Made by a program: the position numbers and the translations under genes. A DNA stretch of 60,149 bases from Octopus bimaculoides (taxonomy: Eukaryota): positions 86,013,691 to 86,073,839 of the forward strand of contig NC_068990.1 of NCBI RefSeq assembly GCF_001194135.2, given 5' to 3'. This document shows positions 10,492 through 58,349 of this stretch, one piece after another. Within the stretch, counting starts at the first letter, position 1; each line of letters starts with the position of its first letter. The notes beneath the pieces were generated by a model. That model saw nothing but the letters and a program-made list of their open reading frames with translations, searched no databases and had not been told where the DNA came from.

Positions 10492-10522
10492 GTAATAATA
10501 TCTACAAATCTTTTCTTTTTAT

Positions 10523-10885
10523 CTCCCTTCTCTCTTTTCCTCCTCTTCCCTTCTCTCTTTTCTTCCTCTTCCCTTCTCTCTTTTCCTCCTCTTCCCTTCT
10601 CTCTTTTCCTCCTCTTCCCTTCTCTCTTTTCCTCCTCTTCCCTTCTCTCTTTTCCTCCTCTTCCCTTCTCTCTTTTCCTCCTCTTCCNNNNNNNNNNNNN
10701 NNNNNNNNNNNNNNNNNNNNNNNNNNNNNNNNNNNNNNNNNNNNNNNNNNNCCTCTTCCCTTCTCTCTTTTCCTCCTCTTCCCTTCTCTCTTTTCCTCCT
10801 CTTCCCTTCTCTCTTTTCCTCCTCTTCCCTTCTCTCTTTTCCTCCTCTTCCCTTCTCTCTTTTCCTCCTCTTCCCTTCTCTCTTT
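10523..10885. repeat. 23-bp pyrimidine minisatellite (CCCTTCTCTCTTTTCCTCCTCTT)n, interrupted by an N-gap
   Basis: Period 23 counted directly. Confidence 0.9.
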
Positions 10886-11312
10886 TCTTCCTCTCTCACT
10901 CTCTTCTTGCTCCTCCCTCTCTTTATCTGTCTGTCTCTCTCTCTCCTCTAACTTTACACAATATCATTCAACCATTAACAATGGAGATATTGACTATTCC
11001 CCTCTCCCAAAATTTCAGGTCTTGTATTATACTGGTTTTCTCATAATTTATTTTATATAAACCCCTAATGGTTATTTTACTACATAATCAAGATAGGGAC
11101 AGGAGTTTCACCACTTCTGAGACTGATGGGTGGAAAGAGGCAAGTTATGCTCAATTTATCCCTTCCTCAGCACTTGGCATCACTTCAGACTGGGTCTTTG
11201 GATTCACCTAATCCACCTTCTTGCCAGAATATGATTTCAAATTTTTTTCCTTTGTCTATATTTACAACCTTCTTCAGGAACTTTTCAAAAATTCTTTTTT
11301 GGTCGCTTCATA

Positions 11313-12672: not shown

Positions 12673-13561
12673 GTAAATATATTTTCTTAAAGTTTTGTTA
12701 AATCTTTATCTCAGAAGGTGAAGAGAATATTTTTGGGTTATGTGTACTGTTTATTTATTGTTTGCATCAATATGGTGTGAGCATCTTATACATGCATCTG
12801 TACATTGTGTGTGGATGTTCTGAGAAAGCAGGGTTGTGGGCACTATTTTTTTCTCTGGTTGAACCATTTTAAATGGGTAAAAAAAAAAGTAGCGTAGTTA
12901 TTTGTCTTAAAATTATCAATTTTGATATCATCATCATCATCATTTATCATCTGTTCCATGCTGGCATGGGTTGGACAGTTTGACTGGTGCTGGTAAGCTA
13001 GAGAGATGCACCAGGCTCCAGTCTGATTTGGTATGCTTTCTATGGCTGGATGACCTTCCTAAAGCCAACCAATATCTATAAAACAAGAATCTTCTCCTGG
13101 ATAAGATGCTAGTCTATTACGGGATTGGTTTATTTCCCCCCCCCCCCTTGCCAAAACAAGCTCAATAGTGCCAGCCATCAAATTACTTGTCACAGTTATG
13201 CTTAGAACATGGTGAACTTCATCATGTGAGATATCTTGCCTCCTGAATATAAAGTTGCATCAGTGACAGATTTGAGATGTCAGTATCATGGATGAAGGGA
13301 AATTTCAAGAAATACGCAATGTATGAAGGAGATAAAATGTTGATTTATATTGGCGATAGATTCAGTGAATATTTTAGCAGGATATATGCTGGATAGCAGA
13401 TATCTGTGAGTTGTTGGGGGAAGACACTCATGTACGAAGTAAAACTTAAATGACTTAAGAAGTGATTATCTCTACAGAAATTCGGAGTAATAGTTTTTCT
13501 ACTTCAATAAATCTTTCTTTTTCTTTCCCCTTTTAATTTTGTTGGTAATTTTGTTTTTCAG

Positions 13562-14901: not shown

Positions 14902-15112
14902 AAGGCGACGAGCTAGCAGAATTGTTAGCATGCTGGGCAAAATGCTTACCAGTATTTCATCTGCTGCTACGTTCTGAGTTTAAATTCCGCTAAGATTGAC
15001 TTTGTCTTTCATCCTTTCAGGGTCGATTAAATAAGTACCAGTTACGCACTGGGGTCGACGTAATCGACTTAATCCCCTCCCCCAAGCTGCCCTTATGGCA
15101 AAAATTTGAAAT
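14902..15112 (+). mobile_element. tRNA-derived SINE, family A
   Basis: AAGGCGACGAGCTAGCAGAA…GTTCTGAGTT…GGGGTCGA; multiple copies in the window. Confidence 0.75.
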
Positions 15113-17983: not shown

Positions 17984-18167
17984 GTAAGAATTCTCCCTTC
18001 TTCTTTGTTCATCATCATTTAATGCCCATTCTTCATGCTGGCATGGGTTGGATGGTTTGGTAGGGGCTGGCCAGCTGCAGAGCTACCCAGGCTCAGTGTC
18101 TGTTTTTGGCATGGTTTCTATGGCTGACTGTCCTTCCTAATGCCGACCACTTTACAGAGGGTATTGG

Positions 18168-18450
18168 GTGCAATGGCCCGGTGGTTAAGGCAGCGGATTC
18201 GCGGTTGGAGGATCACGGTTTCAATTCCCAGACCGGGTATTGTTTGTGTTTATTGAGCGAAAACACCTAAAGCTCCACGAGGCTCTTTCACCCCAACTTT
18301 CTCTCACTCTTTCTTCCTGTTTCTTGAGTAACGCTGCGATGGACTAGCGTCCCGTCCAGCAGGTGGGGAACACGTACGCCATAGAAATCAGGAAACCGGT
18401 CCCATGAGCCTGGCTAGGCTTTAAAAGGGCACATAATAAATAATAATAAT
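18168..18450 (+). mobile_element. tRNA-derived SINE abutting a truncated family B SINE
   Basis: A-box TGGCCCGGTGG, B-box-like GTTTCAATTCC, (AAT)n tail. Confidence 0.6.
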
Positions 18451-21329: not shown

Positions 21330-21640
21330 TACCCCCTGACTGGTTCCTGTACCAGTGGCACGTAATAAGCACCATCCGAACGTGGCCGATGCCAGTACCT
21401 CCTGACTGGCTCCTGTACCGGTGGCTCATAAAAAGCACTATCTGGACATGATTGATGCCATTGGTGGCACATAAAAAGCACCCACTACACTCTTGGAGTG
21501 GTTGGCGTTAGGAATGGCATCCAGCTGCAGAAACTCTGCCAGATCAGATTGGAGCTTGGTACAGCCACTGGCTCTCCAGACCTCAGTCAAACCGTCCAAC
21601 CCATGCCAGCATGAAAAACGGTCGTTAAGCGATGATGATG
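21330..21640 (+). mobile_element. SINE-like repeat, family B, with (GAT)n tail
   Basis: AAAAGCACCCACTACAC…GGCATCCAGCTG…CCAACCCATGCCAGCATGGAAA…GATGATGAT; at least 8 copies in the window. Confidence 0.75.
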
Positions 21641-21880
21641 AATGCACTGCTACTGCTGTAGGGGGATCCTGCATTACTACTCTACTAGTTATACCGTACA
21701 CACCACTACTTTTGTCCTAGTTATAATTACACAATATTAATGCCACTACATTACTCATATTCACCATATTTTGATGACCTAACAGCAATTCCATTATAAC
21801 TACTGCAATTCTGTATTTCCAAGGGATAAACTCTGTTCTTGTTGAGATCGTCCAATTCTAACCAAACATTTGCCTTTCAG

Positions 21881-22012
21881 ATTCATCAGAAGGAAGGCGG
21901 ATTTCCAGCACATGTACCACACCCAGATGAATTGCCACCAGAACCTGAAATAATTGAAGTTGTGTTTGAGAAAGTGAAAGGCAGTATAGGACTAAGTATT
22001 GTAGCTGCTAAG
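21881..22012 (+). CDS. AFDN: Afadin exon, PDZ betaA-betaB (…EIIEVVFEKVKGSIGLSIVAAK)
   Basis: TTTCAG acceptor, GTAAAT donor, 44 codons, phase 0/0; GSIGLSIVAAK is the afadin PDZ carboxylate loop. Confidence 0.95.
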
Positions 22013-22534
22013 GTAAATATTCTATTTTACATTTTCCTTCACTGAATTATGACAAATGTTTAGTCTAAGTACTAAGCCCCCCCCATCATCATCTTTTGTG
22101 TCCTTGCTATTAGCCGCCCCCGTTGTCGTCATCTTTGTTTTAAATGTCCATTTGCCGTGCTAGCATATACTGAATGTACCAATCATACAGTATATGTCGC
22201 TTGTCTCATCCTTTTGTTAGCTTTTCTGTGTTGCACAACATCCCGAGATTTTGTCTTGTTTCTCCTCCCCCCACCCCATCCACTGTCTTTCTCTACTAGA
22301 AAAATCCTCCCCTGACAGCATGATACCTTTTCCCTCAGAACCCATTTTCCTTTTCGCTCACATATCCATACCAGATCAGCTCACATCACCCAACAGCTCA
22401 TATTCAGTTACCTTTCCTGTATGTCTCAGCTTTAATATTTAACTAATCTCAACTTTTATGCATTCTACCTTTCATGTAGATTAAATATTGCACATCCAAT
22501 ACATCCTACTTCGTTTGTCCCTAAACTCTATTTT

Positions 22535-22790
22535 TCAGTGGTGTCCTATAAACCATTGAATTATTGGAACACAGTCTTCTCTACTGTTCCATGTTCCTTC
22601 AAATTATTGTGGCACACAATCTTCAATAATGTCTCATAAACCTTTGGATTATTGGGACACAGTCTTCAGCAGTGTCCTATATTCCTTCAAATTATTGTGA
22701 CCCACAGACTTCAGTAGTGTCTCCATATGCCTTCGAGTTACTAGTGCAATAGTCTTCAGCAGTGTTCCATTATCATTCAGATTACTTTTT
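22535..22790. repeat. Degenerate ~42-44 bp tandem repeat, about 6 units
   Basis: Recurrent CAGTCTTCAGCAGTGT…CCTTCAAATTATTG…CAC. Confidence 0.7.
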
Positions 22791-23414
22791 CAGTCAAATG
22801 CAGCAGTTTGCACCTGTAGCTATCTAATTCTCCAATTTTAGATTAATCAACCCAAAACTGAATGAAGAGCTGCAAAATGTAGATAAATGTGACTTGAATT
22901 CTGGTGGAAAGTATTTAACCTTTTCAAGGGTTTCAATGTTTTCATGAACACAGACCCCAAAGTTCTTTGCACATCCATTTAAAAAAAAACACTTAAGCCA
23001 CCATATTTATATACTGTTCCCTTGTTGGGAAATTTGTTTTGATGAATTTATATTGGTCAAAGGGTTAGAGGACATGCATTGATGTATCTTTTTTTTTTTT
23101 TTGCATGTCAGACCAACCCCACCACATATTCACATTCTGTTGATATGTTTCCACATAACACAGTGAATTGGTAGATTCAGTAGTGTTGGACAAAATACCT
23201 TTTGATATTTGTCCTGCTTCTGTACATTCTGTGTTCAAATCCTGCTGAGGTTAACTTTGTTTTTCATACTTTTAGAGATGTTAAAATACAACACCAGTCA
23301 AGTACTGGTGTTGATGCAGCCAACTGTCTCCTTTCCACAAATTCCTGACCTTGTACCTATGTTAGAAGTTATTATATCCATACACAGGAGGACATATGTA
23401 AAATCCTTGTTTAT

Positions 23415-23640
23415 TGATCTAACACTCCATCGTTATCACCATGGTATTAACCTCACTCTCCTTTGTTAAATGCCCTGTTTGTAAATACCCTGCTAACCTA
23501 ACCTTCTGTTGTTAAATACCCCATGTTAACTCGCTGTTATTAACCCAGTTCTTCTTGTTAACCCTAGCCTTGTTAATCACCTCTCTTCACTGTTAACATT
23601 CCCTGCTTTTTGTTAACCTCCCCTGCTTTTTGTTAACCCA
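23415..23640 (+). promoter_or_regulatory. TGTTAAC/YTAAY motif array upstream of microexon 1 (putative splicing element)
   Basis: Exact TGTTAAC at about 23524, 23556, 23591, 23611 and 23631, plus CTAAC/TTAAC/TGTTAAW variants. Confidence 0.5.
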
Positions 23641-23701
23641 CCAGTTTCTCAAACCACCTGAACCCTATCATTATCAACAGCCACGTTTTCTCATTGTGTA
23701 G

Positions 23702-23731
23702 ATTACTATAGTGGACAGCCATGGTCGTACG
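23702..23731 (+). CDS. AFDN: Candidate 30-nt afadin microexon 1 (ITIVDSHGRT), in the PDZ betaB-betaC loop
   Basis: TTTTCTCATTGTGTAG|ATTACTATAGTGGACAGCCATGGTCGTACG|GTAAGT: consensus splice sites, phase 0/0, no stop codon. No transcript evidence available. Confidence 0.65.
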
Positions 23732-24032
23732 GTAAGTAAGCGTGAAATGACCAAGCCATTGGTCTCACACACTGTGTGTCCGATGACTATTTACGACTGT
23801 GTTGTCTCTCTGTCTCTCTCTTTCCCTCCCTCTCTCTCTCTCTCTCTCTCTGCCTGTTCATGTTATGACAAATGTATATTGGTCTTGATTTAATATCACG
23901 GTCACTTCAAGGTCACCTTACCTCAATGCTGGATCACTTATTCACTCATGCATGGTTTCATGTACGTATGTAACACAAATGCATAAACACACATATTCCT
24001 GCACACATGTATATCTGTATGTTATAGAAACT

Positions 24033-24068
<36 letters not shown>

Positions 24069-24519
24069 TTTACACAATTGTATGCACTCATACACATAAC
24101 CTGCACAGAAGACACATGCATATCTACACTCATGCGCACGCACACACACACACATATATATGATGTTGTAATGTTGTTCCAGTAGACTATTTGTTGTAAG
24201 CTTTTGAAAATTTCTGCTTGTTTCACTCACTGACTTTTAGCTTTCTTCAGTTAGTACTGACTGTAGAACTAGTGTAAACTCTACTCTATATACCACTGCC
24301 TATCTTCAGTTTGTATCAAGTATGAAACAAGTGTAATTTATACTCTATATTCTGCTGTCTGCTCCTCTTTTCAGCTGTGTTGCTAAATCAGCTTCATAAA
24401 ACAGCAAAATTTTAAGGGGTACTGTTAGAAAGTAGTCCAAAATGAATGAAAATATTACTTATAGAATTTAATGTAGAATTCTACATTATTTACATTTGGC
24501 GGATATTTGTCCTCATCTT

Positions 24520-24715
24520 GTTTGTTGTTAACCTAACATTTCGGCTGATATACTCTCCAGCCTTCATCAGGTGTCTTGGGGAAATTTTGAACCTGGGTTC
24601 TCATTCCTAAGGTACTTTTTGTTGTTATTATTCAGGTCACTGCCTGGAATCGAACCCAGAATCTTGGGGTTAGTAACCCGCACTCTTAACCACTATGCCA
24701 TATGCCCGTGGGCAA
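24520..24715 (-). mobile_element. tRNA-derived SINE, present only in duplicate copy 1
   Basis: Reverse tRNA-like head (GGAATCGAACCC…TAACCACTATGCCA). Confidence 0.6.
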
Positions 24716-25304
24716 TTATGAAGTCCTTAATACCAGTTCCCATATTCTACTCATATCTGTCTGAGTTATTGTATGATGTAATCAATGCTAACTGATCAAT
24801 ACTTCTGTGAATTTCAATAAAAGTTTGAAGAATTTCATATTACTAAATCTTCTTTATTCATTCATTGTTTCCTTGAGCTGCATTGATGAATTACAGTTCA
24901 GATTTAATTCCACAGTAATTACACTCCCCCGTGATGTATTTTTTCAAGGTTGTGTGTTTATAATACAATATCAACCAAAGTAAGAGATTATGGCATTTAA
25001 TTAGTCTACAAATTTTTACTTGTCAGCTAAAAATGTCATAAAAATTAATGTTGAAATAGAAAACTAAACTGTGTTACCCACAAAATTTCCAAGTTATGCA
25101 AAAAAAAAAAAAAAAAAATCCCCCAGAATAATCCAATGCTTGTAGCCCAATCTGATAACCATAACTCTAGAATTAACGTAAGCTATATACTGCTGTTGTC
25201 TACTCCTGTCTAATAACTAGTTTTGGCACCATTGCTTGGCTATAATTAAAGTATCAGCTCTTTGATTAATGGTTTTGTACACAGCTAATCTAATATAGCC
25301 ATAG

Positions 25305-25352
25305 AAACTCTCTCTTTCTCTATTTCTCTCTTTCTCTCTTTCTCTCTTTCTC

Positions 25353-25393
<41 letters not shown>

Positions 25394-25710
25394 ATTGCTT
25401 TCTCTGTCTCTGTTTATATCTCTCTGTCTGTCTTTCTGTTTATCTCTCTCTATTTATATCTCTGTCTGTCTTTCTGTTTATCTCTCTCTCTCTATTTATA
25501 TCTGTCTGTCTTTCTATTTATTTCTCTCTCTCTCTTTGTGTCTTTCTGTCTATCTCTCTCTGCTTGTCTCTTTCTCACTCTTCCTCTCTCTCTCTTTCTA
25601 TCTATCTCTCTCTCTCTCTCTCTCTTTCTGAATGAGTTTCTTCTTGCCTGCCTCCCTCTGACTTTTCTTCCTTCTGTCCTTATCATTCTCTCCTTACTTT
25701 TCCACTTCCA

Positions 25711-25773
<63 letters not shown>

Positions 25774-25779
25774 TCTTTC

Positions 25780-25859
<80 letters not shown>

Positions 25860-25900
25860 ATCTACCTATTCTCTTACCTCTCTCTCTTACACTCACTCAT
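25305..25900. repeat. (CT)n / (CTTT/CTGT) low-complexity tract
   Basis: Seen directly. Confidence 0.9.
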
Positions 25901-26874
25901 TCCTGAACTCAGAACTCCCTAAGTACTAAGCAGAAAAAGAAAAAAGAAAAAAACACAGACATACAATGGCATGTTCCTTTCAAATTAGTCACCTGTTTCC
26001 TGTAATAGTATACCACACCATTGCACCTATACCCATAGCCATTACTTTGCTACTTCACACTCATTAAATCTCAATCCTTCACTCTTGTTACTCCATTTTC
26101 ACTAACATTTTACTCCTTGATAATAAACAACCACATTCTAGCCACTTCAGTGATTACTATTGTGCTGGTGCTCCAGCCTGGTCAGGAACATCACAGTAGT
26201 CTAAAACGATTAATGAAGGCCTCTAGTACTCCTCTTTTTATAGTTTAGTGATGTTTCGACTTGGTCATCACTAACCTCACCCATAACAGTCGTGGGCTGC
26301 ATGCGACCTGCAGGACTTTCTGGGTGGCCTGCTGAATGAAAAATTTTTTGGTAATGTGGTTTGCTTTATGATAAGCCTTGTCTCCTGTGGCCCACGTAGG
26401 GTGGATTGTTGTTTTTTTTTTTCCCCCTCTAGAGTGTAAGGCTAACAGAGAAAATGATGGATACTTTATTACGACATGATAAAAAAAAAAAGGTTTGCTA
26501 AGTAATAATGATGAATGGAGACAGATCTTCATCATTGGTGAGTCTTCTGTCACTGTTATTACCTAGCACCTTTTTTTTTTTTTTTATCTCTGTTGCAACA
26601 TGGCGTCATCATTGGATGCACTGTTTTATTGCAACCGTTTTACTACGTCTTTCACTGTCTTGTTAGTACCAATTGTAGACTTCACCTTTCATTGTGCTTC
26701 ATTTAAATGAATACCACTAATATATTAAATATCATTTTCTTCCTTCTTCTCTCCAACAAAATAATCTCTACACCAAGTAGAAAAAGAAAATGTTTCGAAA
26801 TTTCTTTGTCAACCTCACAATTCCTCACATACATTCACTTTCATTGTTTTAATTTCACACATAGACATATATTT

Positions 26875-27170
26875 GATGTTAAACCCCTGTTTAATGACTT
26901 ATCAATTTTCCCTGTTTGTTAACCACCACACCATTGTTAAATGTATCCCATTTTCAACGACCACTCTGTTGAATACACCCTGTTAACATCCCTTCTCTAT
27001 TAACCTGTTCCTCCCTCGTTAACCTCCTTTCCATCCTTCGTGTTTAACTATGTCCTGCTAACAACCATTCTTATATCGTTAATGCTAACTTGTTTAACTT
27101 TTCCCCCTGCTCATGTTAACCCAACCCTATAGTTGATGTTCACCTCTGTTAATACCTGCAATTGTTAACC
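26875..27170 (+). promoter_or_regulatory. TGTTAAC/YTAAY motif array upstream of microexon 2 (putative splicing element)
   Basis: Exact TGTTAAC at about 26917, 26981, 27114 and 27163, plus many GTTAAC/GCTAAC/TTTAAC variants. Confidence 0.5.
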
Positions 27171-27232
27171 CTCAGTTTCTAAAACCTTTCAAACCCTGTT
27201 GTTATCAATAGTCACATTTTCTCATTGTGTAG

Positions 27233-27262
27233 ATTACTATAGTGGACAGCCATGGTCGTGCG
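27233..27262 (+). CDS. AFDN: Candidate 30-nt afadin microexon 2 (ITIVDSHGRA)
   Basis: TTTTCTCATTGTGTAG|ATTACTATAGTGGACAGCCATGGTCGTGCG|GTAAGT: 29/30 identical to microexon 1, phase 0/0. Confidence 0.65.
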
Positions 27263-28282
27263 GTAAGTAAGCGTGAAATGACCAAGCCATTGGTCTCACA
27301 CTCTGTGTCTGGTGACTATTTACGACTGTGTTGTCTCTCTCTTTGCCTGTTCATGTTATGACAAACGTATATTGGTCTTGATTTAATGTCATGGTCACTT
27401 CCAGGTCACCTTACCTCAATCTTTGAGGAAATGGTGAATCATTTATTCACTGATGCATGGTTTCATGTATAACACAGGTGCATACACACTGTGTAATTTT
27501 ATGTATTTACACACACACATTAATATGCATGTGTATATATTTGTATATGTATGATGATTGCAAAATGTTCATAAATATATATATATACAAATATTCACAC
27601 ACATTCATATATACACACATGTATGTGCACATATACATGTGCATATATTGTATAAGTAGCATGTTGTTATGATATTGTATCTATTGGTTATTTACTAGTA
27701 AAGTTTCTTGTCTCAATCACGGACTTTGAGTCAATTTTCTTCAATTAGTACTGTTTGTAGAACTAGTTTCTAGAATAGTGTAACTCTACTCTATATACAA
27801 CTGCCTGTCTTCTGTTAGTACCAACTGTAGACGTAGTATAAACTATTCTGTATATGCTACTGCCTGTCTTCAGATATCACCTGTCAGAACTACTGTAAAC
27901 TATATATATATGTATGTAATATTATTGTTCTTTCTTATGTAAAATATAGAACTGCTGAAGAAGTGCTTGGGTTGAACCCAAGACAAAAGATAAGAATTGA
28001 GATATAAACTCAAATTAGGCAATCATACTCATACAATTATAAATTCAACTTAAAATGTGCATACATATATTAATACATATCGACACATGAATATTTTTTT
28101 TAATATTCATAAAATATAAATATATATATATATATACACACATAAAAATGGGTTGTGTTTACATATACTTTTATATATATATATATATTTATATTTTATA
28201 AATATAAAAAAAAAATGTCTATGTATTATATGTATATGCATTTTAAGTCGAATTTATAAATGTATCGTTTTCGTGCGGGTGA

Positions 28283-28470
28283 CACGTAAAAGCACCCACT
28301 ACACTCTCTGAGTGGTTGGCGTTAGGAAGGGCATCCAGCTGTAGAAACTCTGCCAAATTAGATTGGAGCCTGGTGTTGCCATCCGGTTTCACCAGTCCTC
28401 AGTCAAATCGTCCAACCCATGCTAGCATGGAAAGCGGACGTTAAATGATGATGATGATGATGATGATGAT
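28283..28470 (+). mobile_element. SINE-like repeat, family B, present only in duplicate copy 2
   Basis: Near-consensus copy with (GAT)n tail. Confidence 0.75.
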
Positions 28471-28562
28471 TGCCTAATTTGAGTTCATATCTAAATTCTT
28501 ATCTTTTGTCTTACATTCGACCCACGCAGTTCTATATTTTTCGTAAGAAAGAACAATAATGT

Positions 28563-28594
<32 letters not shown>

Positions 28595-30566
28595 TATACA
28601 CTCTGTTGCCTGTTTTCAGTTAGTATCAACCAGAGAACTAGTGTAAATGCTGTTTTAGCTTAGATAACTGTACATGTTTAAAAAGTTTGAAATTGGTTCT
28701 GTCTTCAGTTAAACCAACTAAAGAACTAGTGTAAATGACACTGTTTATGCCACTGCCTGCTCTGATCTAATTACTAGTTTTAAACTCCAATTCTATGCAT
28801 TTGTTTATTGCTGGTCTGTAATCAAGGTATCAGGTCTTCGATAAAGGTTTTACCTGTGACTAATCTAACACGGCTCCATAAACTTGGTCTGTCTGTCTGT
28901 CTCTCTACCTTTGAGTTTCTTTTTTGGCAATCTTGTATTTGCTTGCTTCTTTGATTCACCCCTTCTGCATTTTCCTGTCTTTCTCCTTTCTACTATCTCT
29001 CTTCTGTCTATCTATTCTCTCTCTCTTCTCTTTCATTCACACACCTACTCTATTTTCCTCTCTCTGTCTTTCAGACTCATTCTCTACCTTATAACTCTAA
29101 AGGAATTTATATAGACATTTGATGTCCTGCTCCTTTCAAATTAGTGATTGCTTTATTGTAGCATTGCACCACATTGCACCTATGCATGAGCTGCTACTTT
29201 GCTGCTTCACTTGCAGTAATCGAATCCTCAACCTGAAACAATTTACTGTACTTTCAACTGAAAGATCAGTTCCTCGTAATAAACAATCACATTCTGGCTT
29301 TTTTAGTGGTTACGGTTGTTCGTGATACTCTTGCCTGATCCAGAAAACCTCTATAATCTAAATTGACTAGTGTAAACCTCCAACAGCCAACCCACTGGTA
29401 CACCAGCTTGGTCAAGACCTCCCTTCTAATCTATTAAGTGTTCTGGAAATTAAAGAATCGAAAGACACTAAACCAATACCTTGAAAAGTGACTCAAAACA
29501 AAGAATAGAGCATTTTTTTTTTTAAATATGGGAGACAACTTACTTGAAAGTTTTACTCAAATTGGTTTTCCAAACACTTTTGTTGACTTCAGCCAAACTT
29601 TGAGATCCTCGATTTCCTCTACAGGTTTCTGTCCCTCTATCATACTTTTACGTCTTTCAATACCCCACTCAGTTGAAGGGTCTTACTTTGCAAGTTCTTG
29701 GTGACCCCACTTGTGTCTATAGCAGAATGGATTATTATTATTAAGTGTGCAATATTATGAAATTTTCGCCACGACCATCATCATCATCATCATCATCGTT
29801 TAACGTCCGCTTTCCATGCTAGCATGGGTTCCACCCACAAAATAATAACCTCTTTATGATCTGTCATTAATGGACACCTGATCTGTTGCTGCTGAGCTCC
29901 AGAGCAGTTCTGATGATGTGCACTTAGATCAAAGGCATTGTTGTAGTTATAATAATTATAAACCTCTAAATAAATGCATGACCTGCTAAATATAGCAGCC
30001 AGATCTCCCTTCCTACATACCTCTTAAATTGGGAGAGAGACATTGGCTAATGTAGCTGTCCCATATATATATATATATATATATATATAAACAACTACAT
30101 TAGCTGGTGTATAGTAAAGGAGATCTGGCTGCTATATTTAGCATGCCATGCATCTACTTGGAGGTTGTCTTCTTGACTCAACAAGACCTGTTGTATTTTG
30201 GGTGGCTGAAAATTAAATGTATTTATAATAAATATTTGTATAGTCTTGGTAATTACTGATTAATATTGGCTTTAGAACACATTTTTTTAAAACTCTTGTA
30301 TGTAATTTTAACTTTATCAACAAAGAGACTTTGTTATAGGGTTGCATGCAACGTGAGTCTTTGACTTCTTTCTTACTTTCTCTCTTCCTTTGATTTTTGT
30401 CAACAATGGGAACCATATTGTTCCTTCATTCCTTCCATCTTTTCTCATGTCACCTAAAATAACAAATCAGTTATGTAAGTAAAGTTGGCAACAGATTTTG
30501 TAGCCGTCATTACTGCTGACTATAACTTGCATTTTAATTATCAAAGTTGAAATTTTGTTGCTTTTG

Positions 30567-30599
<33 letters not shown>

Positions 30600-31065
30600 T
30601 GGCTAATTTTCATTTTTCCTTTGTGTGTAGTATTTTATGTGGTCTGTATAAGTTGGTTTTAGAATTGTAAAATACCATTTTCTGTTCTATTGAGGATAAT
30701 CAAGCATAGTCTCAGGTTTCTATTTTATTTTTACCTTCTCCAAACCACTGACCATAAGGGATCATTGTTAAAACGTCTTAAAGAATTTGCTAAAAAAAAA
30801 TAAAACAGGCATTGAATATTTAAGTCAAGGTTTTATTTGGATTGTTTAAAAATACTTGCTAATCACCAAAGCAAACCCTCACTTGCTTCTGGAAGGAAAG
30901 ATGGGCTGTTGTAAAATTGTGCTATCGATCACAAGAGACCATTTAATTTTGCTAATTATCTTCTGGAATGCAAAAGTTTGGTTGAAGATTGAAATCAAAC
31001 TCTGTCCCGGTACACATTTCTTGTTCCTCATCCTGAATATAATTTCTTTCTTCTGCTATTTCCAG

Positions 31066-31131
31066 GGTGATGGCCAGATGTCACGAGGAATCTACATCAA
31101 GTCAGTTGTGCCCGGTGGAGCAGCTGCTTTG
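31066..31131 (+). CDS. AFDN: Afadin exon, PDZ (GDGQMSRGIYIKSVVPGGAAAL)
   Basis: TCCAG acceptor, GTAAGT donor, 22 codons, phase 0/0. Confidence 0.95.
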
Positions 31132-31501
31132 GTAAGTCATTCAATATATTCCCCAGATATCTGAATACCAGGAGAATATGATATTTAAACAGGTACCTTA
31201 AGAATTAATCTAAGAATAATTGGAATGAAACTTCATTCCAAAGATATGTTTGTTCCAGTAAATTGTGGCATTCTTAGAGAATTGTCCAAAGTGAACATTT
31301 ATGAAAATTCTTTAAAACTATTTGTTGTGGTATCATAATTAATAAACATAAAATTCTGTCATTTTTCATTAAAATTTGCCCGATTTCATTGAAATAGATA
31401 ATTCTGGAACACTCTGTATTAAATTTCATAACTAGAATGTCTTAAATGCTGCATCACTAAATATTTAGAGAAAATTAACTTGACTATGTTTATCATTTCA
31501 G

Positions 31502-31869: not shown

Positions 31870-32104
31870 AAGGTGGCGAGCCGGCAGAAACATTAGCACG
31901 CCGGGCGAAATGCTTAGCGGTATTTCGTCTGCCGCTACGTTCTGAGTTTAAATTTCGCTGAGGTCGACTTTGCCTTTCATCCTTTCAGGGTCGATTAAAT
32001 AAGTACCAGTTACGCACTGGGGTCAATGTAATTATCTTAATCCATTTGTCTGTTCTTGTTTGTCCCCTCTGTGTGTAGCCCCTTGTGGGCAATAAAGAAA
32101 TAAG
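31870..32104 (+). mobile_element. tRNA-derived SINE, family A
   Basis: Near-consensus copy of the 14902 element. Confidence 0.75.
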
Positions 32105-33274: not shown

Positions 33275-34069
33275 GTAAGTACCTCTAACTTGTTCATTTT
33301 ACTTTGTCTCTTCTCTTCAGAAAGCAGGGTCCCCCTCCCCCCACTCAAACTATAACCAAAATACTAAAATATTCAAATATGTCAGCTATAGTAGAAAATA
33401 CTTGTGCAAAGGGCTGTTCTGTAAGACTAAAGCCATGACATGATTGGGAAGGAAGCTTTTTTAACCACACAACCACACCAGCGCCTGTCTATACATATAT
33501 AGTGCTTGTGTGTGTTACATGTCAAATTTCGCTCATTAAACTTTGGTCAACCTGACACTTTGATAGAAGACATAGTGTCATACAAGGGATCAAATCCAGA
33601 ACTACTTAATTACAAAGTGAACTTTTCAACCCCAACAGTTATGCCTGTTCCCATTTGTAGACACAATAAAACAAGTGACTGTAATAAAGGTGACTCTACA
33701 ATAACGTAACTATTTTACAACACAAATCTCAGATTAAATCTTTTGCCGAACAAAAACAACAAAAGAATTTTTGCATTTCATTTAATCTGGATTTATGAGA
33801 TTATTTTAAGTTAGACATATTTAATTTGTTTCTGAGAGTAAACTGTTGGGTTTACTGGTCACCTGATACTGAATTCAAACTTTTGTTTTTGATTTTTTCC
33901 GACATCACTATTATTGAAACCATTGTGTGGTGTTTGTGACCAAGGCACATAATTTTGCTTGTCTCAGTCTGTCTGGCTGACAAATTGATATTGTTTGTTT
34001 GAATTACAAGCAAATAAGTTCTACCTTTTCTTCACAGTTAAGAGGTTAATGATGTTGAAAGAGCTGACA

Positions 34070-34295
34070 TCATCATCGTTTAACGTCCGCTTTCCATGCT
34101 AGGATGGGTAGGACGATTTGACTGAGGACTGGCGAACCAGATGGCTGCACCAGGCTCCAATCTGATCTGGCAGAGTTTCTACAGCTGGATGCCCTTCCTA
34201 ACGCCAACCACTCCAAGAGTGTACTGGGTGCTTTTACGTGCCACCTGCACAGAGCCAGTCCAGCAGCACTGGCAACGACCTCGCTCAAATGATTT
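34070..34295 (-). mobile_element. SINE-like repeat, family B
   Basis: Reverse complement of the family B consensus. Confidence 0.75.
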
Positions 34296-39121: not shown

Positions 39122-39289
39122 CTAATGATCATGGATACTGACTTGTCTTTTAGGAAACAGTTTGAAAACCATTGTTTTGAGTTGTGTGCTTGTTGTCCAC
39201 TTCCTCACTGTCTCTTCATTTCTTACACTTATTGTTAGCTTTTGGTGTCCTGTATTGATGTATTACATCGCCTGGTATGATAGTGCCGC

Positions 39290-39650
39290 TGGACTGGCTC
39301 TTGTGTGGGTGGCACATAAAATACACCATTTTGAGCGTGGCCGTTGCCAGTACCGCCTGACTGGCCTTCATGCCGGTGGCACGTAAAAGCACCCACTACA
39401 CTCTCGGAGTGGTTGGCGTTAGGAAGGGCATCCAGCTGTAGAAACTCTGCCAAATCAGATTNNNNNNNNNNCACTACACTCTCGGAGTGGTTGGCGTTAG
39501 GAAGGGCATCCAGCTGTAGAAACTCTGCCAAATCAGATTGGAGCCTGGTGTAGCCATCTGGTTTCACCAGTCCTCAGTCAAATCGTCCAACCCATGCCAG
39601 CATGGAAAGCGGACATTAAATGACGATGATGATGATGATGATGATGATGA
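39290..39650 (+). mobile_element. SINE-like repeat, family B, containing a 10-N gap
   Basis: Family B consensus with (GAT)n tail. Confidence 0.75.
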
Positions 39651-41561: not shown

Positions 41562-41778
41562 ATGTTGCCAGTACCGCCTGACTGGCCTTCGTGCTGGTGG
41601 CACGTAAAAGCACCCACTACACTCTCGGAGTGGTTGGCGTTAGGAAGGGCATCCAGCTGTAGAAACTCTGCCAGATCAGATTGGAGCCTGGTGCAGCCAT
41701 CTGGTTCACCAGTCTTCAGTCAAATCGTCCAACCCATGCTAGCATGGAAAGTGGACGTTAAATGACGACGACGATGAT
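41562..41778 (+). mobile_element. SINE-like repeat, family B
   Basis: Family B consensus. Confidence 0.75.
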
Positions 41779-42383
41779 CCTTCATTTGGCTATAATTTGA
41801 CGTGTTTTCTGCTCTAGCTACGGGTTGACTGATGCCTTGAGAGTGGTGTTTTGTAGACTCTGTGTGCCAACTGTGTAGCAGCCCATCAGAAGCAACAACA
41901 CTTGTTTTGAGATGGTTGACTTATCCTTCAAATTGTGTAAAGCTCCACCTTGCATGTTGTTGCCTTTAGTGGAGTCTGTGAGTGGGTTTGGTTGGTGAAA
42001 ACTGAAAGAAGCCCATTGTGTGTGTGTGTGTGTTCGTGGATCTTTGTTTTGACATCGTGCAGTAGTTATGAATGAGTGTCACTGCTATACAGGCAATATG
42101 GTGATGACACAGTCCTTCATTTCTAATCTTCTGTGAAAGCCTATCTGGCAAAACGAGGAAATATTATCTTGCTCAGAAACAAGTGAGGGTTGATGACAGA
42201 AACGGTTTGGCCTGTAAAAAGTCTACTCTAACAAATTCTGTCCAACTCGTGCCAGAATAGTAACAAAAATGGGCATGAAAATAATGTTGTGTGCTGTGTT
42301 TAATTGTATAGTGTTACAAACAGGATAAATAAAACTTGGGATGCAAAAGTATTCATATCATTTCATTTAGCTGTGGGACTACA

Positions 42384-42798: not shown

Positions 42799-43071
42799 GT
42801 TAGTGTTAGCTTCGTTTAGACTTGGTTTAATGTTTCCGCTATAGTTGTCTCTTCTTTTACTGTGACCTCACTCATTCATTTAGGTTTCTGGAGCTACCAC
42901 TCCTCATTAGATCACTGGTTCTCCTTCAGACAAATATCAGGATATTCCTACCCCAAAGATATTGGTGAACTGTTTTCCCTACCCATCCACCAACTCCTCT
43001 TAACATTTTTGTTACCATATTTCTTTTTGAAATTCACTGCTTTTGATCCAGTTAATTTTGAAAATAATAAA

Positions 43072-43380
43072 GATCATCATCATCATCGTTTAACGTCCGC
43101 TTTCCATGCTGGCATGGGTTGGACGATTTGACTAAGGACTGGCAAGCCAGAAGGCTACACCACTCTCCAATCTGATTTGGCAGAGTTTCTACAGCTGGAT
43201 GCCCTTCCTAACGCCAACCACTCCAAGAGTGTAGTGGGTGCTTTTACGTGCCACCGGCATGAGGGCCAGTCACATGGTACTGGCAACAGCCACGCTCAAA
43301 AAGGTGTTTTTTACATGCCACCTGCACAGGAGCCAGTCCAGCGGCACTGGTAACTACCTCACTCGAATGATTTTCAACCT
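43072..43380 (-). mobile_element. SINE-like repeat, family B
   Basis: Reverse complement of the 41562 copy. Confidence 0.75.
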
Positions 43381-54404: not shown

Positions 54405-54549
54405 TTTCCCGTCGAAGACTACGTATGAGTGTTCCAGTTTTGCTGAACAACGTGCACAAATAATTTGTTTATAGGGATCAAATGGTCGTGGCGCACATTA
54501 GCTCACTTTCTCCATCAGATCAACGTTTTGAACTGGTGCACTGGGGCTA

Positions 54550-54756
54550 AAACATAGAGGGGACAAACAAGGACAGACAAAGGGATTAGGTCGATTACAT
54601 CGACCCCAGTGCGTAACTGGTACTTAATTTATCGACCCCGAAAGGATGAAAGGCAAAGTTGACCTCGGCGGAATTTGAACTCAGAACGTAACGGCAGACG
54701 AAATACCGGTAAGCATTTCGCCCGGCGTGCTAACGTTTCTGCCAGCTCTCCGCCTT
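54550..54756 (-). mobile_element. tRNA-derived SINE, family A
   Basis: Reverse complement of the 31870 copy. Confidence 0.75.
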
Positions 54757-54786: not shown

Positions 54787-55421
54787 GTCGAGGTAACAAT
54801 CAAAAGAGGTATCTTCCAGGGTGATTCTTGTTCACCTTTGTTATATTTGCTATAGCTTCGATCCCATTTTCTGTAGTTCTACGCAAAGTCAACGTGCATT
54901 ATGAGATGAGAAAGAATGGACCTCGTCTCAACCATCTTCTTTTCATAGATGATTTAAAACTCTTCAGAAAAACTGAGCCTGGAATGAAGAGGCTGGTTGA
55001 GACTGTGCAAATGTGCAGCAAGGATACAAGGATGGCATTCGGTATCTCAAAGTGTGTGGTGCTCACTTTGAAACGGGGGGAAAGAGCAGATTGTAGGGGC
55101 ATAGAATTGCCAAACGGAGAGCGAATGGAAGACTCGGATGATGATAGATACAAGTACCTTGGGATTCAGGAGTTCGACAATATCTCACCTAGATAATGAA
55201 AGACAAGGTCACTACTGCATATTTGAAGCGCCTCAAACTTCTCTTGAAGTCAAAACTCAACGCAAGGAACCTTATGACTGCTATCAACATATGGACTGCT
55301 GCTGTAATCCGCTACAGTGCATCACATCTCAAATGGACACAAGCGGAGATTAACCAACTCGATCGCACTACCTGAAAGACAATAACAATGCATAGTACCC
55401 TCCGTCTTAAGGCGAACGTAT
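54787..55421 (+). mobile_element. Degraded non-LTR retrotransposon RT fragment, R4/Dong-like
   Basis: Across frameshifts: KRGIFQGDSCSPL…NHLLFIDDLKLF…YKYLGIQE…YLKRLKLLLKSKLNARNLMTAINIW…IRYS…KWT…LDR. Confidence 0.85.
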
Positions 55422-56456
55422 AAGGTAATCACTCGCCATATCGCGGTTCACCTATCGCGTCCTCAGTACATCGCAGATTTTTCTGGTTAATATATGCAAA
55501 TTTATATCGCAGACTCCTCGGTACATCGCGGGTTTCTGCGGCCGATAGGCATTTCTAGTGTAACAATAAATTGTACACATGTCATGCGACATGATAGCTT
55601 TGACTTGCACGGTTGCTCCCACAACCATGTCGCGCACATATGGTTGTGATGCATGTGCCTGGTGTACCCTTATCAGGCAGGTAGTCATGATGGGTACATT
55701 GGGCTACATATATTTGTACCCCAGTGTCACTTTGATGGCATGCTCTGCTCTCTTACTCTATAAAAATCCTTTCTACTATGGGTACAAGGCCTGAAATTTT
55801 GGGGAAAGGAACAAGTTGATTACATCGACCCCAGCATTTCACTGGTACTTCATTTATTGGTCCCGAAAAGATAAAAGGAAAAAATCGACTCCGGTGGCAT
55901 TTGAACTCAGAACGTGAAATCGGACGAAATAGCTATATGTATTTTGCCCGTCGTGCTAACAATTCTGCAATAATAATAATAAGCATAGCAACAACAATAA
56001 AAGAACAATGAAGAAATAATAGATCAGAGGGGATTTATTACTATCATAGTATAATACCAATCTTTTTTTAATATAGGCACAATGCTTGAAAGTTTGGAGG
56101 AGGGGCGAGTTGCTTTTATTGAATACTTGTCTGATACTTATTTTATAGACCCCGAAAGGATGAAAGGCAAAATCGACCTCGACGGGAACTGAACCTAGAA
56201 CGTAAAAGCAGACGGAATACTGCTAATCACTTTGTCCGGCGTGCTGACGATTCTGCCAGCTTGCCAATAATAGAATCTATGTAGGGGTTTAAATGTTCCC
56301 GTTCGTTCGCAATAAATAAATGAATGAATCTCTAAGGGAAGTAACTCGCTGTAAACCACTAGAATTATCTTTCCTTTGTTTTTACTCCCACACTGTCAGT
56401 TTAGTTCCTGCCTAGCGTATGGAACACCAGAGCAAGTGATTGTTTTGGTTTTAACG

Positions 56457-58311: not shown

Positions 58312-58349
<38 letters not shown>

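What the first reader, a model, noticed from the sequence alone, without database searches (positions are those of the whole stretch)
23415..23640. Array of TGTTAAC / branch-point-like YTAAY motifs upstream of microexon 1
Seen: five exact TGTTAAC and about eight variants (CTAAC, ATTAAC, TGTTAAA/T), roughly every 20 nt in pyrimidine-rich spacers, ending about 65 nt before the acceptor. No comparable cluster was noticed before the constitutive exons. Established: YUNAY is the branch-point consensus, and STAR-family proteins (SF1, QKI/HOW/ASD-2) bind UAAC-containing motifs. Inference: a multivalent splicing-control platform of alternative branch points or STAR-protein sites for the microexon.
Basis: partly seen in the sequence, partly recalled or inferred. 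Interest (0 to 1): 0.72.

Follow-up and report, generated by a model that had tools for sequence, protein, structure and literature searches.

The report
Branch-site-like motif array before microexon
Just upstream of a tiny 30-base candidate exon in an invertebrate afadin gene lies a real, dense array of UGUUAAC-type motifs that look like splicing branch sites; a second copy of the exon has its own array, so this is probably a multi-site splicing control element, though no experiment shows it.

Summary
Window 23412-23637 holds 5 exact TGTTAAC and 8 variants. There are 13 YTAA cores about 19 nt apart on the sense strand, ending 64 nt before the acceptor of a 30-nt exon (23702-23731). These two arrays are the top two 250-nt windows of the 60 kb for every motif version. 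Fourteen constitutive acceptors have 0-3 such heptamers, and 115 kb of afadin loci from other species have no array.

Information sits in a 7-mer, UG(U/C)UAAC. This 7-mer can pair with the U2 branch-site region through wobble pairs, and it also occurs at branch-point distance in constitutive introns of the same gene.

The gene is afadin. The exon would insert 10 aa into the PDZ beta2-beta3 loop.

Best reading: a multivalent pre-mRNA platform for branch-site-recognising factors (SF1/U2 or a STAR protein) that controls the microexon.

Points against:
- An AG at -22 and a proximal UnA argue against the array supplying the catalytic branch points.
- No strict QKI core is present.
- No orthologue or RNA data were available.
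- A decaying minisatellite is not excluded.

Interest is moderate.

The parts
21881..22013 (+). Constitutive afadin exon encoding the start of the PDZ domain (...EIIEVVFEKVKGSIGLSIVAAK). It ends in phase 0 with donor AAG|gtaaat.
   Evidence: Sequence. tblastx match to L001 12000-12095. Acceptor preceded by TTCTAAC at -20.
23412..23637 (+). Array 1 (the finding): 13 YTAA cores, 10 of them U2-compatible heptamers T[AG][CT]T[AG]A[CT], in pyrimidine-rich spacers (67% Y, 10% G).
23591..23638 (+). The only true tandem repeat inside array 1: 2.4 copies of the 20-nt unit TGTTAACCTCCCCTGCTTTT. It is a recent local unit duplication; array 2 has one unit fewer here.
   Evidence: TRF, the repeat finder family D5, paralogue alignment.
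23631..23637 (+). Last TGTTAAC unit, with its branch-like A at -66. It is conserved at -65 in copy 2 (27163-27169) and is the nearest fully canonical branch-site sequence to the acceptor.
23672..23680 (+). Proximal candidate branch site TATCAAC (A at -25/-26), followed directly by an AG at -23/-22. Both are conserved in copy 2 (TATCAAT-AG).
   Evidence: The same TATCAAT sits at -23 of the constitutive FHA exon.
23702..23731 (+). Candidate microexon 1: 30 nt, tag|ATT...ACG|gtaagt. It is open only in the phase required by its neighbours and encodes ITIVDSHGRT.
   Evidence: phases; it is an insertion relative to 14 afadin/canoe PDZ sequences; the PDZ fold is retained in an AF2 model.
23732..23976 (+). 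Downstream intronic block conserved between the two copies (93% at +1..+72; 80-93% up to +245). It includes TGTGTG and a TGCATG at 23949-23954.
26877..27169 (+). Array 2: 15 YTAA cores, 8 of them U2-compatible heptamers, upstream of the duplicated microexon.
27233..27262 (+). Candidate microexon 2, a paralogue identical at 29 of 30 nt, encoding ITIVDSHGRA.
27263..27475 (+). Conserved downstream block of copy 2, with TGCATG at 27454-27459.
31066..31131 (+). Constitutive PDZ exon 2 (GDGQMSRGIYIKSVVPGGAAAL). It starts in phase 0, after the 9-kb intron that holds both microexon copies.

Best explanation
The array is a multivalent cis-element of the pre-mRNA. It consists of about 13 branch-site-mimicking cores, UG(U/C)UAAC, each followed by a pyrimidine-rich spacer and set 14-28 nt apart. 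It lies 65-290 nt upstream of a lineage-specific alternative 30-nt exon that would insert 10 residues into the beta2-beta3 loop of the afadin PDZ domain.

Proposed mechanism: the cores are bound by factors that read branch-site sequences. These are KH-QUA2 proteins (SF1 with U2AF65 on the adjacent pyrimidines, or a tissue-specific STAR paralogue of the QKI/ASD-2 or Sam68/SLM2 type, binding as dimers) and possibly U2 snRNP by wobble pairing. Occupancy of this platform sets how efficiently the weak, exon-definition-poor 3' splice site of the microexon is used.

The catalytic branch point is more likely the proximal UAUCAAY at -25, or the conserved last unit at -66, than the bulk of the array.

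Shown here: the array, its statistics, its strand specificity, its duplication, its branch-site likeness, and the gene and reading-frame context.

Inferred: that the 30-nt segment is spliced, that the array acts on it, which factor binds, and the direction of the effect.
For: (1) Density. The two arrays are the top two of all 250-nt windows in 60 kb: TGTTAAC 5 and 3 against at most 1 elsewhere; TTAAC 7-8 against at most 3; U2-compatible heptamers 10 and 8 against at most 4, with a background of 0.45. Simulations never reach these counts.

(2) Strand specificity. U2-compatible heptamers number 10 against 1, and 8 against 2, on the sense and antisense strands, although GTTAAC is a palindrome. 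The flanks are asymmetric: T before the core, C after it.

(3) Information is confined to the 7-mer; the spacers carry almost none.

(4) The spacing is regular. It matches the more-than-15-nt spacing reported for STAR dimers on UWAA sites (PMC5397175).

(5) The 3' 140 nt of the two arrays align motif by motif. Core columns are 75% identical and other columns 55% (Fisher P 0.009). One unit changed from UAUUAAC to UGCUAAC and stayed branch-site-like.

(6) UGUUAAC is a functional branch site that pairs with U2 by wobble (bioRxiv 10.64898/2026.08.09.743773). The same or similar motifs sit at -40, -24, -25, -20 and -34 of constitutive acceptors here.

(7) The RNA is predicted to be unstructured (z +0.72 and -0.56).

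(8) AG is depleted in the arrays (5 observed against about 12.7 expected from composition). All 5 lie 4-12 nt 3' of a branch-like A.

(9) The exon looks real.
- It has canonical ag|...|gtaagt splice sites.
- It is open in the one frame its phase-0 neighbours require.
- The exon and 245 nt of downstream intron are 93-97% identical between copies, while more distant flanks are about 70%.
- A TGCATG is conserved downstream.
- The insertion falls in a PDZ surface loop, and the fold is kept in the model.

(10) Precedent: ASD-2 acts through CUAAC repeats next to a 3' splice site (PMC3469465).
Against: - No transcript, lariat or orthologue evidence exists. The nearest sequences available are only 50-85% identical at protein level and lack both the microexon and the array.
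- The two arrays share ancestry, so they are not independent. The numbers of intact and decayed cores (10+5 and 8+9) are roughly what neutral decay of an ancestral array of about 16 units would give at the divergence of the flanks.
- The core-versus-spacer test rests on an alignment that the cores themselves anchor.
- G at position 2 (20 of 28) and U at position 3 (23 of 28) are the wobble options rather than the optimal ones for U2, and G is disfavoured by QKI-type proteins. This points to an unidentified specificity or to a founder effect.
- There is no ACUAAY core.
- The 94% identical block could be a gene-conversion tract rather than a constrained one.
Confidence: 0.45

Rival explanations
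1. The array supplies the real, redundant distal branch points of the microexon. U2 snRNP pairs with any of about 10 UGYUAAC units and the lariat forms 65-290 nt upstream. This would give the long, accessible branch-point-to-3'ss region that microexons need.
For: - There is full six-position U2 complementarity, wobble included, at 10 and 8 sites.
- UGUUAAC is used as a branch site in yeast.
- No fully canonical branch site lies within -12..-60 of either microexon. The nearest is the conserved last unit at -66/-65.
- Neural microexons have extended, accessible BP-3'ss regions (PMC12871342).
- AGs inside the arrays lie only 4-12 nt after a branch-like A.
- Distant branch points mark alternative exons (PMC1431707).
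Against: - An AG at -22 is conserved in both copies. Scanning from any array branch point would meet it first, giving a 51-nt exon with an in-frame TAG (my translation of the sequence).
- By the criterion of PMC1431707 the AG-exclusion zone is 22 nt, not 100 or more.
- A UnA-type site (UAUCAAY) sits at the canonical -25. An identical TATCAAT is the best candidate at -23 of a constitutive exon.
Confidence: 0.2
2. The array is a non-functional relic: a degenerate minisatellite that existed before the 3.5-kb tandem duplication. Since then it has decayed and undergone replication slippage. The motif is simply the best-preserved part of the old unit.
For: - TRF detects young local duplications inside array 1: 15 nt x2 and 20 nt x2.4.
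- The arrays are indel-rich and overall only 54% identical, barely above the shuffled value of 42 +/- 8.
- The ratio of intact to decayed cores is compatible with neutral decay (my estimate).
- Weak residual signal exists at -5, -3 and +5 beyond the 7-mer.
- Regular spacing is what a former tandem repeat would leave.
- Large AG-poor zones can be caused by repeats (PMC1431707).
Against: - Information drops sharply outside the 7-mer, and G is kept at 71% in a 10%-G context.
- Cores are better conserved than spacers between paralogues.
- One unit was replaced by a different branch-site-like heptamer.
- The position is just upstream of a conserved exon-like block in both copies.
- No other copy of the array or unit occurs in 60 kb or in 115 kb of other loci.
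Confidence: 0.2
3. The array is a DNA-level element: a cluster of binding sites for a transcription factor that reads GTTAAC/GTTAAT (homeodomain or HNF1-like half-sites). On this view it is an intronic enhancer unrelated to splicing.
For: - GTTAAC is palindromic, and GTTAAT/ATTAAC resemble HNF1-type half-sites (my own knowledge).
- Clusters of sites are typical of enhancers.
Against: - The extended motif and its flanks are strongly strand-asymmetric (TGTTAAC-C; sense against antisense counts 10:1 and 8:2), which a palindromic DNA site would not require.
- The context is pyrimidine-rich on the sense strand.
- CTAAC variants fit a branch site but do not fit GTTAAC.
Confidence: 0.05
4. The 30-nt segment is not an exon. 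The 290-nt block of about 94% identity is a gene-conversion tract or another conserved non-coding element, and the array's position next to it is incidental.
For: - Exon and flanking intron are equally conserved (97% against 93%), so there is no coding-specific signature.
- The peptide has no counterpart in 14 afadin/canoe PDZ sequences, in other loci or in metagenome scans.
- A distant species has only a 230-nt intron at this position.
Against: - The splice sites are perfect: ag|, |gtaagt.
- The length is a multiple of 3, and the segment is open precisely in the phase-0 frame the flanking exons require, while another frame has a stop.
- The insertion point is a tolerant PDZ loop.
- Conserved flanking introns with a downstream UGCAUG are typical of regulated alternative exons.
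- There is no Rfam family and no stable fold.
Confidence: 0.1

Closest known systems
ASD-2 (C. elegans QKI homologue) acting through intronic CUAAC repeats (let-2 intron 10, unc-60 intron 1A; PMC3469465)
   Same: Both have repeated branch-site-like UAAC-containing pentamers in the intron just upstream of a regulated 3' splice site. Both are read by a KH-QUA2 protein, next to other elements (a UGUGUG stretch; here TGTGTG lies in the conserved downstream block).
   Different: The worm has 2-4 CUAAC copies packed close to the 3'ss. Here there are 13-15 cores spread over 230-290 nt, the core is mostly UGUUAAC (only 5 of 28 are CUAAC), and the array ends 64 nt from the acceptor. No binding was tested.
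Sam68/SLM2 (T-STAR) response clusters of U(A/U)AA at the neurexin AS4 exons (PMC5397175, PMC3636136)
   Same: Both are multivalent clusters of UUAA/UAAA cores. Site density is decisive. The dimers need sites more than 15 nt apart, and here the median spacing is 18.5 nt. The clusters work from upstream or downstream positions, and the targets are neuronal alternative exons.
   Different: The known clusters are A/U-rich and about 51 nt long. Here the core carries extra specificity (U-G before, C after) and sits in a C/U-rich context. UWAA as such is not enriched in the arrays relative to AT-rich parts of the window; only UUAA and UUAAC are.
QKI response element (ACUAAY plus a UAAY half-site within 1-20 nt; PAR-CLIP AYUAAY)
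   Same: There are many UAAY half-sites (11 and 13 per array) at suitable spacing, and three AUUAAC.
   Different: There is no ACUAAY core in either array. G rather than A precedes the Y-UAAC in 20 of 28 cores.
Distant-branch-point exons with long AG-exclusion zones (alpha-tropomyosin exon 3, PTB exon 11; PMC1431707)
   Same: Strong branch-site sequences with adjacent pyrimidine tracts lie far upstream of an alternative exon. AG is depleted over about 300 nt.
   Different: The strict AG-exclusion zone here is only 22 nt because of a conserved AG at -22. The known cases have one or a few distal branch points, not an array of 10 or more.
Vertebrate and insect neural microexon architecture (SRRM3/4 eMIC, UGC motif, extended and accessible BP-3'ss region; PMC12871342)
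   Same: The exon is very short, the 3'ss is weak, the upstream region is long, unstructured and pyrimidine-rich, and the flanking introns are conserved.
   Different: No UGC lies within 65 nt of the acceptor, and UGC is not enriched in the array (4 against a background of 3.2). The repeated element is a branch-site mimic rather than UGC.
Decoy 3' acceptor elements (for example In100 of caspase-2; from memory, not checked here)
   Same: Branch site plus pyrimidine tract modules could engage U2 snRNP non-productively and influence a neighbouring exon.
   Different: In100 is a single decoy located downstream of the regulated exon. Here there are many modules upstream, and their AGs lie too close to the branch A to be used.

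Membership tests
U2-type branch-site sequence (yUnAy / UACUAAC) | Pairs with the U2 snRNA GUAGUA box around a bulged A | tested here: met
   The pattern T[AG][CT]T[AG]A[CT] (Watson-Crick or wobble at all 6 positions) matches 10 sites in array 1 and 8 in array 2, against 0.45 per 250 nt background. UGUUAAC is functional in yeast.
U2-type branch-site sequence (yUnAy / UACUAAC) | Lies 18-40 nt (rarely more than 100 nt) upstream of the AG it serves, with no usable AG in between | tested here: not met
   The nearest unit is at -66/-65. An AG at -22 intervenes in both copies.
U2-type branch-site sequence (yUnAy / UACUAAC) | Lariat formation at the A | not testable with these tools
   Needs lariat reads or primer extension.
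QKI/ASD-2-type STAR response element | ACUAAY (or AYUAAY) core | tested here: not met
   ACTAAY: 0 in both arrays. AYTAAY: 2 and 1.
QKI/ASD-2-type STAR response element | A second UAAY half-site within about 20 nt (bipartite, for a dimer) | tested here: met
   11 and 13 TAAY per array. The median spacing of cores is 18.5 nt.
Sam68/SLM2 UWAA cluster | High local density of UUAA/UAAA motifs, with pairs more than 15 nt apart | tested here: met
   TTAA: 10 and 13 per array, against 1.6 per 226 nt background. 20 of 26 spacings are 14-28 nt.
Sam68/SLM2 UWAA cluster | Direct protein binding and a splicing response | not testable with these tools
   Needs CLIP/EMSA and minigenes.
Distant-branch-point exon (Gooding et al. 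2006) | AG-exclusion zone of 100 nt or more upstream of the 3'ss (ignoring the last 12 nt) | tested here: not met
   The first AG is at -22. Only if AGs within 12 nt 3' of a branch-like A are discounted does the zone reach about 300 nt.
Minisatellite / tandem repeat | Head-to-tail copies of a unit of constant length with similarity across the whole unit | tested here: inconclusive
   TRF finds only 2.0 copies of a 15-nt unit and 2.4 copies of a 20-nt unit in array 1, and none in array 2. Spacings range from 5 to 46 nt and similarity is confined to the 7-mer. The spacing is nevertheless under-dispersed.
Transposable element / dispersed repeat | Further copies elsewhere; terminal repeats or a poly-A tail | tested here: not met
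   A self-BLAST of the window finds only the tandem paralogue. No terminal inverted repeats were found. Nothing comparable occurs in 115 kb of other loci. The rest of the genome could not be searched.
SRRM4/eMIC-dependent neural microexon | UGC motif between the pyrimidine tract and the 3'ss (within about 50 nt) | tested here: not met
   No TGC lies in 23638-23701. The nearest are at 23624 and 23604.
Afadin/canoe gene (host gene) | FHA, DIL and PDZ domains in order, with an AFDN C-terminal region | tested here: met
   The DIL exon hits PF01843 proteins named afadin. PDZ hits include human Afadin and Drosophila Canoe chains. FHA-like and other exons were mapped by tblastx. The homologue of the large exon carries PF26705 AFDN.

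The most novel reading that the evidence does not exclude
This would be a previously undescribed device for defining microexons. Tandem 'branch site + pyrimidine tract' modules act as pseudo-3' splice sites whose AGs are absent or sterically masked. They load SF1/U2AF/U2, or a STAR paralogue with UGUUAAC specificity, upstream of a 30-nt exon. This would be a lineage-specific alternative to the SRRM4/eMIC-UGC enhancer, controlling an insertion in the ligand-binding loop of the afadin PDZ domain.
Probability: 0.2. Interest if true: 0.75.

Novelty: new variant of a known kind. Interest (0 to 1): 0.5.

Why it matters
If the array works as proposed, it would show that microexon recognition can be driven by sheer multiplicity of branch-site mimics. 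That would differ from the UGC/SRRM4 logic known in vertebrates and insects. It would also give a compact, mutable cis-element (about 13 identical cores) for asking how SF1, U2 and STAR proteins compete on pre-mRNA.

It would further define an afadin isoform with a 10-residue insertion in the PDZ beta2-beta3 loop, a place where insertions are known to alter ligand choice in other PDZ proteins.

If it is only a decaying minisatellite, it is a useful caution: repeats can mimic splicing signals and AG-exclusion zones.

Tried and rejected
- Known RNA family: an Rfam scan of 22000-31200 at E up to 1 gave only low-complexity miRNA-model noise far below gathering scores, and nothing in the arrays or the conserved block.
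- RNA structure: folds of both arrays with their exons are no more stable than shuffles. A structural element or pairing of the GUUAAC palindromes was therefore rejected.
- Transposable element or satellite: no other copy in the window, no terminal repeats, and TRF finds only two small local duplications.
- Orthologues:
  - Two protein searches and six contig look-ups yielded only distant species. L001 has a 230-nt intron at this position. L004 gives 6.6 kb of the orthologous intron with no microexon-like ORF and no array.
  - The large afadin exon has a single database homologue at 50% identity.
  - The window's own ORF is not on record.
- Metagenome scans for the exact microexon and for a degenerate peptide-plus-splice-site pattern both returned 0 hits.
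- Literature: no paper holds both 'afadin' and 'microexon'.
- U12-type branch site (UCCUUAAC): considered and rejected. The G in UGUUAAC mismatches, and the upstream donor is U2-type (AAG|gtaaat) (my reasoning on the sequence).
- Recursive splicing: rejected, because the junction AAG|ATTACT does not regenerate a 5' splice site.
- SRRM4-type UGC enhancer: not present near the acceptor.
Full report
CONTEXT

The window is eukaryotic, and it carries an afadin/canoe gene on the + strand. The evidence:
- An exon at 16.6-17.0 kb matches DIL-domain proteins (PF01843), several of them named afadin by their sources.
- tblastx against fetched loci maps FHA-like, DIL and PDZ exons in order.
- A concatenated PDZ query hits human Afadin and Drosophila Canoe PDB chains.

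The PDZ domain is split by an intron:
- Exon 21881-22013 ends in phase 0...GSIGLSIVAAK|gtaaat.
- Exon 31066-31131 starts in phase 0: cag|GDGQMSRGIYIKSVVPGGAAAL.
- The 9-kb intron between them contains the finding.
- In a distant species with a compact gene (L001) the same intron is 230 nt and has nothing in it.

OBSERVATION

- Five exact TGTTAAC lie at 23524, 23556, 23591, 23611 and 23631.
- The variants are CTAAC x3, ATTAAC x2, TGTTAAA x2, TGTTAAT and TGTAAAT.
- That makes 13 YTAA cores. The last ends at 23637, 64 nt before the exon 23702-23731 (tag|ATTACTATAGTGGACAGCCATGGTCGTACG|gtaagt).

Enrichment is large.
- TTAAC: 7 against 0.30 per 226 nt.
- TGTTAAC: 5 against 0.06.
- None of 5000 Markov-1 simulations or 5000 shuffles of the region reaches the observed counts of any motif version.

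It has 15 cores and lies before a second copy of the exon at 27233-27262 (29 of 30 nt identical).

In sliding windows over the whole 60 kb, the two arrays rank first and second for TGTTAAC, GTTAAC, TTAAC, TAAC and YTAAY. The third-best window is far behind.

Fourteen constitutive acceptors of the gene have 0-3 U2-compatible heptamers within 300 nt. The microexon copies have 10 and 7. About 115 kb of afadin loci from other species contain no comparable cluster.

ANATOMY

I aligned all 28 cores on YTAA.
- Information is confined to T-G-Y-T-A-A-C.
- T occurs at -2 in 21 of 28 cores.
- G occurs at -1 in 20 of 28, although G is only 10% of the bases.
- At position 0, T occurs 23 times and C 5 times.
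- C follows the core in 20 of 28.
- The spacers are 67% pyrimidine but otherwise uninformative.
- Nearly every G in the arrays sits in a UGU context.

Spacings run from 5 to 46 nt with a median of 18.5. They are not periodic: TRF sees only a 15-nt x2 and a 20-nt x2.4 repeat in array 1 and none in array 2. They are, however, more regular than random placement. The CV is 0.45 against 0.72 (P about 0.001), and 20 of 26 spacings fall in 14-28 nt against 9.3 expected.

The motif is sense-strand specific. The wobble-tolerant U2-complementary pattern T[AG][CT]T[AG]A[CT] occurs 10 and 8 times on the sense strand of the arrays, and 1 and 2 times on the antisense strand. This argues for an RNA-level element even though the GTTAAC hexamer is a palindrome.

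Both arrays are predicted to be unstructured (z +0.72 and -0.56). No Rfam family matches.

THE DUPLICATION

The two copies belong to a tandem duplication of about 3.5 kb, with colinear homology between 23534-24378 and 27055-27884. Identity between the copies, by segment:

| Segment | Identity |
|---|---|
| Exon | 97% |
| +1..+72 | 93% |
| Up to +245 | 80-93% |
| -59..-1 | 78% |
| +470..+650 | 70% |
| Whole arrays | 54% of columns (shuffled 42 +/- 8) |

The exon-proximal block is therefore better conserved than its surroundings. That could reflect constraint or gene conversion. The arrays are rich in indels.

The 3' 140 nt of the arrays do align motif by motif, giving 7-8 orthologous units. Core columns are 75% identical and other columns 55% (Fisher P 0.009). 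The cores themselves anchor this alignment, so the test leans towards that result. One unit changed from UAUUAAC to UGCUAAC and stayed branch-site-like. One unit was lost in copy 2 (TGTTCAC). One unit was gained in copy 1 by a 20-nt duplication.

A TGCATG lies in a conserved ATGCATGGTTTCATGTA at +218 and +192 of the two donors. UGCAUG is the Rbfox site; that identification is from general knowledge.

IS THE 30-NT SEGMENT AN EXON?

This is not shown. In favour:
- The splice sites are canonical, with a perfect GTAAGT donor.
- The length is a multiple of three.
- The segment is open in exactly the phase-0 frame its neighbours require (ITIVDSHGRT and ITIVDSHGRA). Another frame contains TAG.
- The flanking intron is conserved.
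- The insertion lies between SIVAAK (beta2) and G.GQ..GIYIK (beta3). There, 14 afadin/canoe PDZ sequences have no residues.
- An AlphaFold2 model keeps the PDZ core at pLDDT above 90 and lengthens the beta2-beta3 hairpin. The insert itself has low confidence, about 57.

Against:
- There is no homologous peptide anywhere I could search.
- There is no coding-specific conservation signature.

WHAT THE MOTIF RESEMBLES

UGUUAAC pairs with the U2 GUAGUA box at every position if G-U wobbles are allowed: U:A, G.U, U.G, U:A, A:U, bulged A, C:G. This pairing is my own derivation. A 2026 preprint shows UGUUAAC to be a selected, functional yeast branch site, preferred over UACUAAA when U2 is fully pseudouridylated.

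In this gene, likely branch sites of constitutive introns belong to the same family:

| Motif | Position relative to acceptor |
|---|---|
| TACTAAC | -25 |
| TTCTAAC | -20 |
| ACCTAAC | -34 |
| TCCTAAT | -17 |
| AATTAAC | -24 |
| TGTTAAC | -40 |

Each array core is followed by a pyrimidine-rich stretch, so every unit resembles a branch site plus polypyrimidine tract without a usable AG.

AG is depleted in the arrays: 5 observed against about 12.7 expected from base composition, and 12.7 per 250 nt in the window overall. All five AGs lie 4-12 nt 3' of a branch-like A, where an AG is normally unusable.

WHY I DO NOT ADOPT THE 'ARRAY OF REAL BRANCH POINTS' READING AS FIRST CHOICE

Both copies keep an AG at -22, immediately after a UAUCAAY whose A lies at the canonical -25. 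The same TATCAAT is the best candidate at -23 of the constitutive FHA exon.

A branch in the array would meet that AG first. The result would be a 51-nt exon with an in-frame TAG. By the definition in PMC1431707 the AG-exclusion zone is 22 nt, and that paper found that an AG at -12..-25 argues against a distant branch point.

The last unit, conserved at -66/-65, remains a possible distal branch point. That would fit the extended, accessible BP-3'ss regions of neural microexons (PMC12871342).

WHICH FACTOR?

STAR-family precedents are close.
- ASD-2 binds CUAAC repeats next to a regulated 3' splice site (PMC3469465).
- Sam68/SLM2 bind as dimers to U(A/U)AA motifs more than 15 nt apart, and site density decides the response (PMC5397175). 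The spacing here fits that.

Two points do not fit.
- There is no ACUAAY core, and only three AYUAAY.
- The preferred G at position 2 and U at position 3 are optimal neither for U2, SF1 nor QKI.

So either an unidentified specificity or a founder effect of unit amplification is at work.

VERDICT

| Reading | Confidence |
|---|---|
| Multivalent pre-mRNA platform of branch-site mimics, read by SF1/U2 or a STAR paralogue, tuning use of the microexon 3' splice site | 0.45 |
| Array of genuine distal branch points | 0.20 |
| Neutral relic of a minisatellite | 0.20 |
| The segment is not an exon | 0.10 |
| DNA-level factor-binding cluster | 0.05 |

The neutral-relic rival deserves respect. The two arrays are not independent, and the ratio of intact to decayed cores (10+5 and 8+9) is roughly what neutral decay of about 16 ancestral units would give at the divergence of the flanks.

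No close relative, transcript or lariat data could be reached with the tools, so function remains inferred.

As a kind, this is a new variant of known intronic branch-site-like and STAR-type regulatory clusters. It is unusual in the number of sites and in its association with a duplicated microexon that would modify a PDZ binding loop.

Noticed in passing
window 26877-27169 and 27233-27262: A second array and a second copy of the microexon lie 3.5 kb downstream of the first, from a tandem duplication (colinear homology 23534-24378 with 27055-27884). The encoded peptide differs by one residue (T to A). Whether the copies are used together, exclusively or not at all is unknown.
   Followed up: yes
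window 23949-23954 and 27454-27459: A TGCATG (Rbfox-type site) sits inside a conserved ATGCATGGTTTCATGTA at +218 and +192 nt downstream of the two microexon donors. TGCATG is not rare in the window (about 1 per 2.3 kb per strand), so only the conserved position is notable.
   Followed up: partly
window 23679-23680 and 27210-27211: An AG is conserved at -22 of both microexons, directly after UAUCAAY. If it were used as the acceptor, it would give a 51-nt exon with an in-frame TAG, a possible unproductive isoform.
   Followed up: partly
window 12927-13071, 18009-18171, 21463-21641, 28270-28461, 34068-34289, 39282-39636, 41563-41786, 43066-43300, 60067-60132: A SINE-like dispersed repeat of about 180-220 nt occurs in at least 9 copies in both orientations within the afadin introns (78-97% identity).
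   Followed up: no
window 14902-15076, 31870-32082, 54543-54756, 55798-55968, 56131-56272, 58190-58510; ORF 54828-55196: A second dispersed repeat family is present. Nearby is an ORF with a weak reverse-transcriptase match (PF00078, E 2e-5, below the curated cutoff), probably a retroelement remnant.
   Followed up: partly
window 10509-10950 and 25308-25900: A 23-nt CT-rich minisatellite, interrupted by an assembly gap, follows the FHA-like exon directly. A long CT-rich low-complexity tract lies between the two microexon copies. The region 20-30 kb has a strong negative GC skew on the sense strand.
   Followed up: no
L005 2574-2615 (ENA ERZ25069866 contig): In another species' afadin locus, a PDZ-exon-2-like segment (GGGQIEQPIYIKFV) lies about 130 nt upstream of the real PDZ exon 2 (2749-2814). 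It is a possible duplicated, alternative or decayed exon at the same PDZ loop position.
   Followed up: no
window 56376-56912: An ORF downstream of afadin has a weak Cupin_8 (JmjC-like) match (E 0.004, below the cutoff). It is probably the first exon of a neighbouring gene.
   Followed up: partly
window 23896-23916 / 27391-27411: Inside the conserved downstream block, GGTCAC is directly repeated (GGTCACTTCAAGGTCACC). In copy 1 it includes TCAAGGTCA, which resembles a nuclear-receptor extended half-site; copy 2 has TCCAGGTCA. Its significance is unknown.
   Followed up: no
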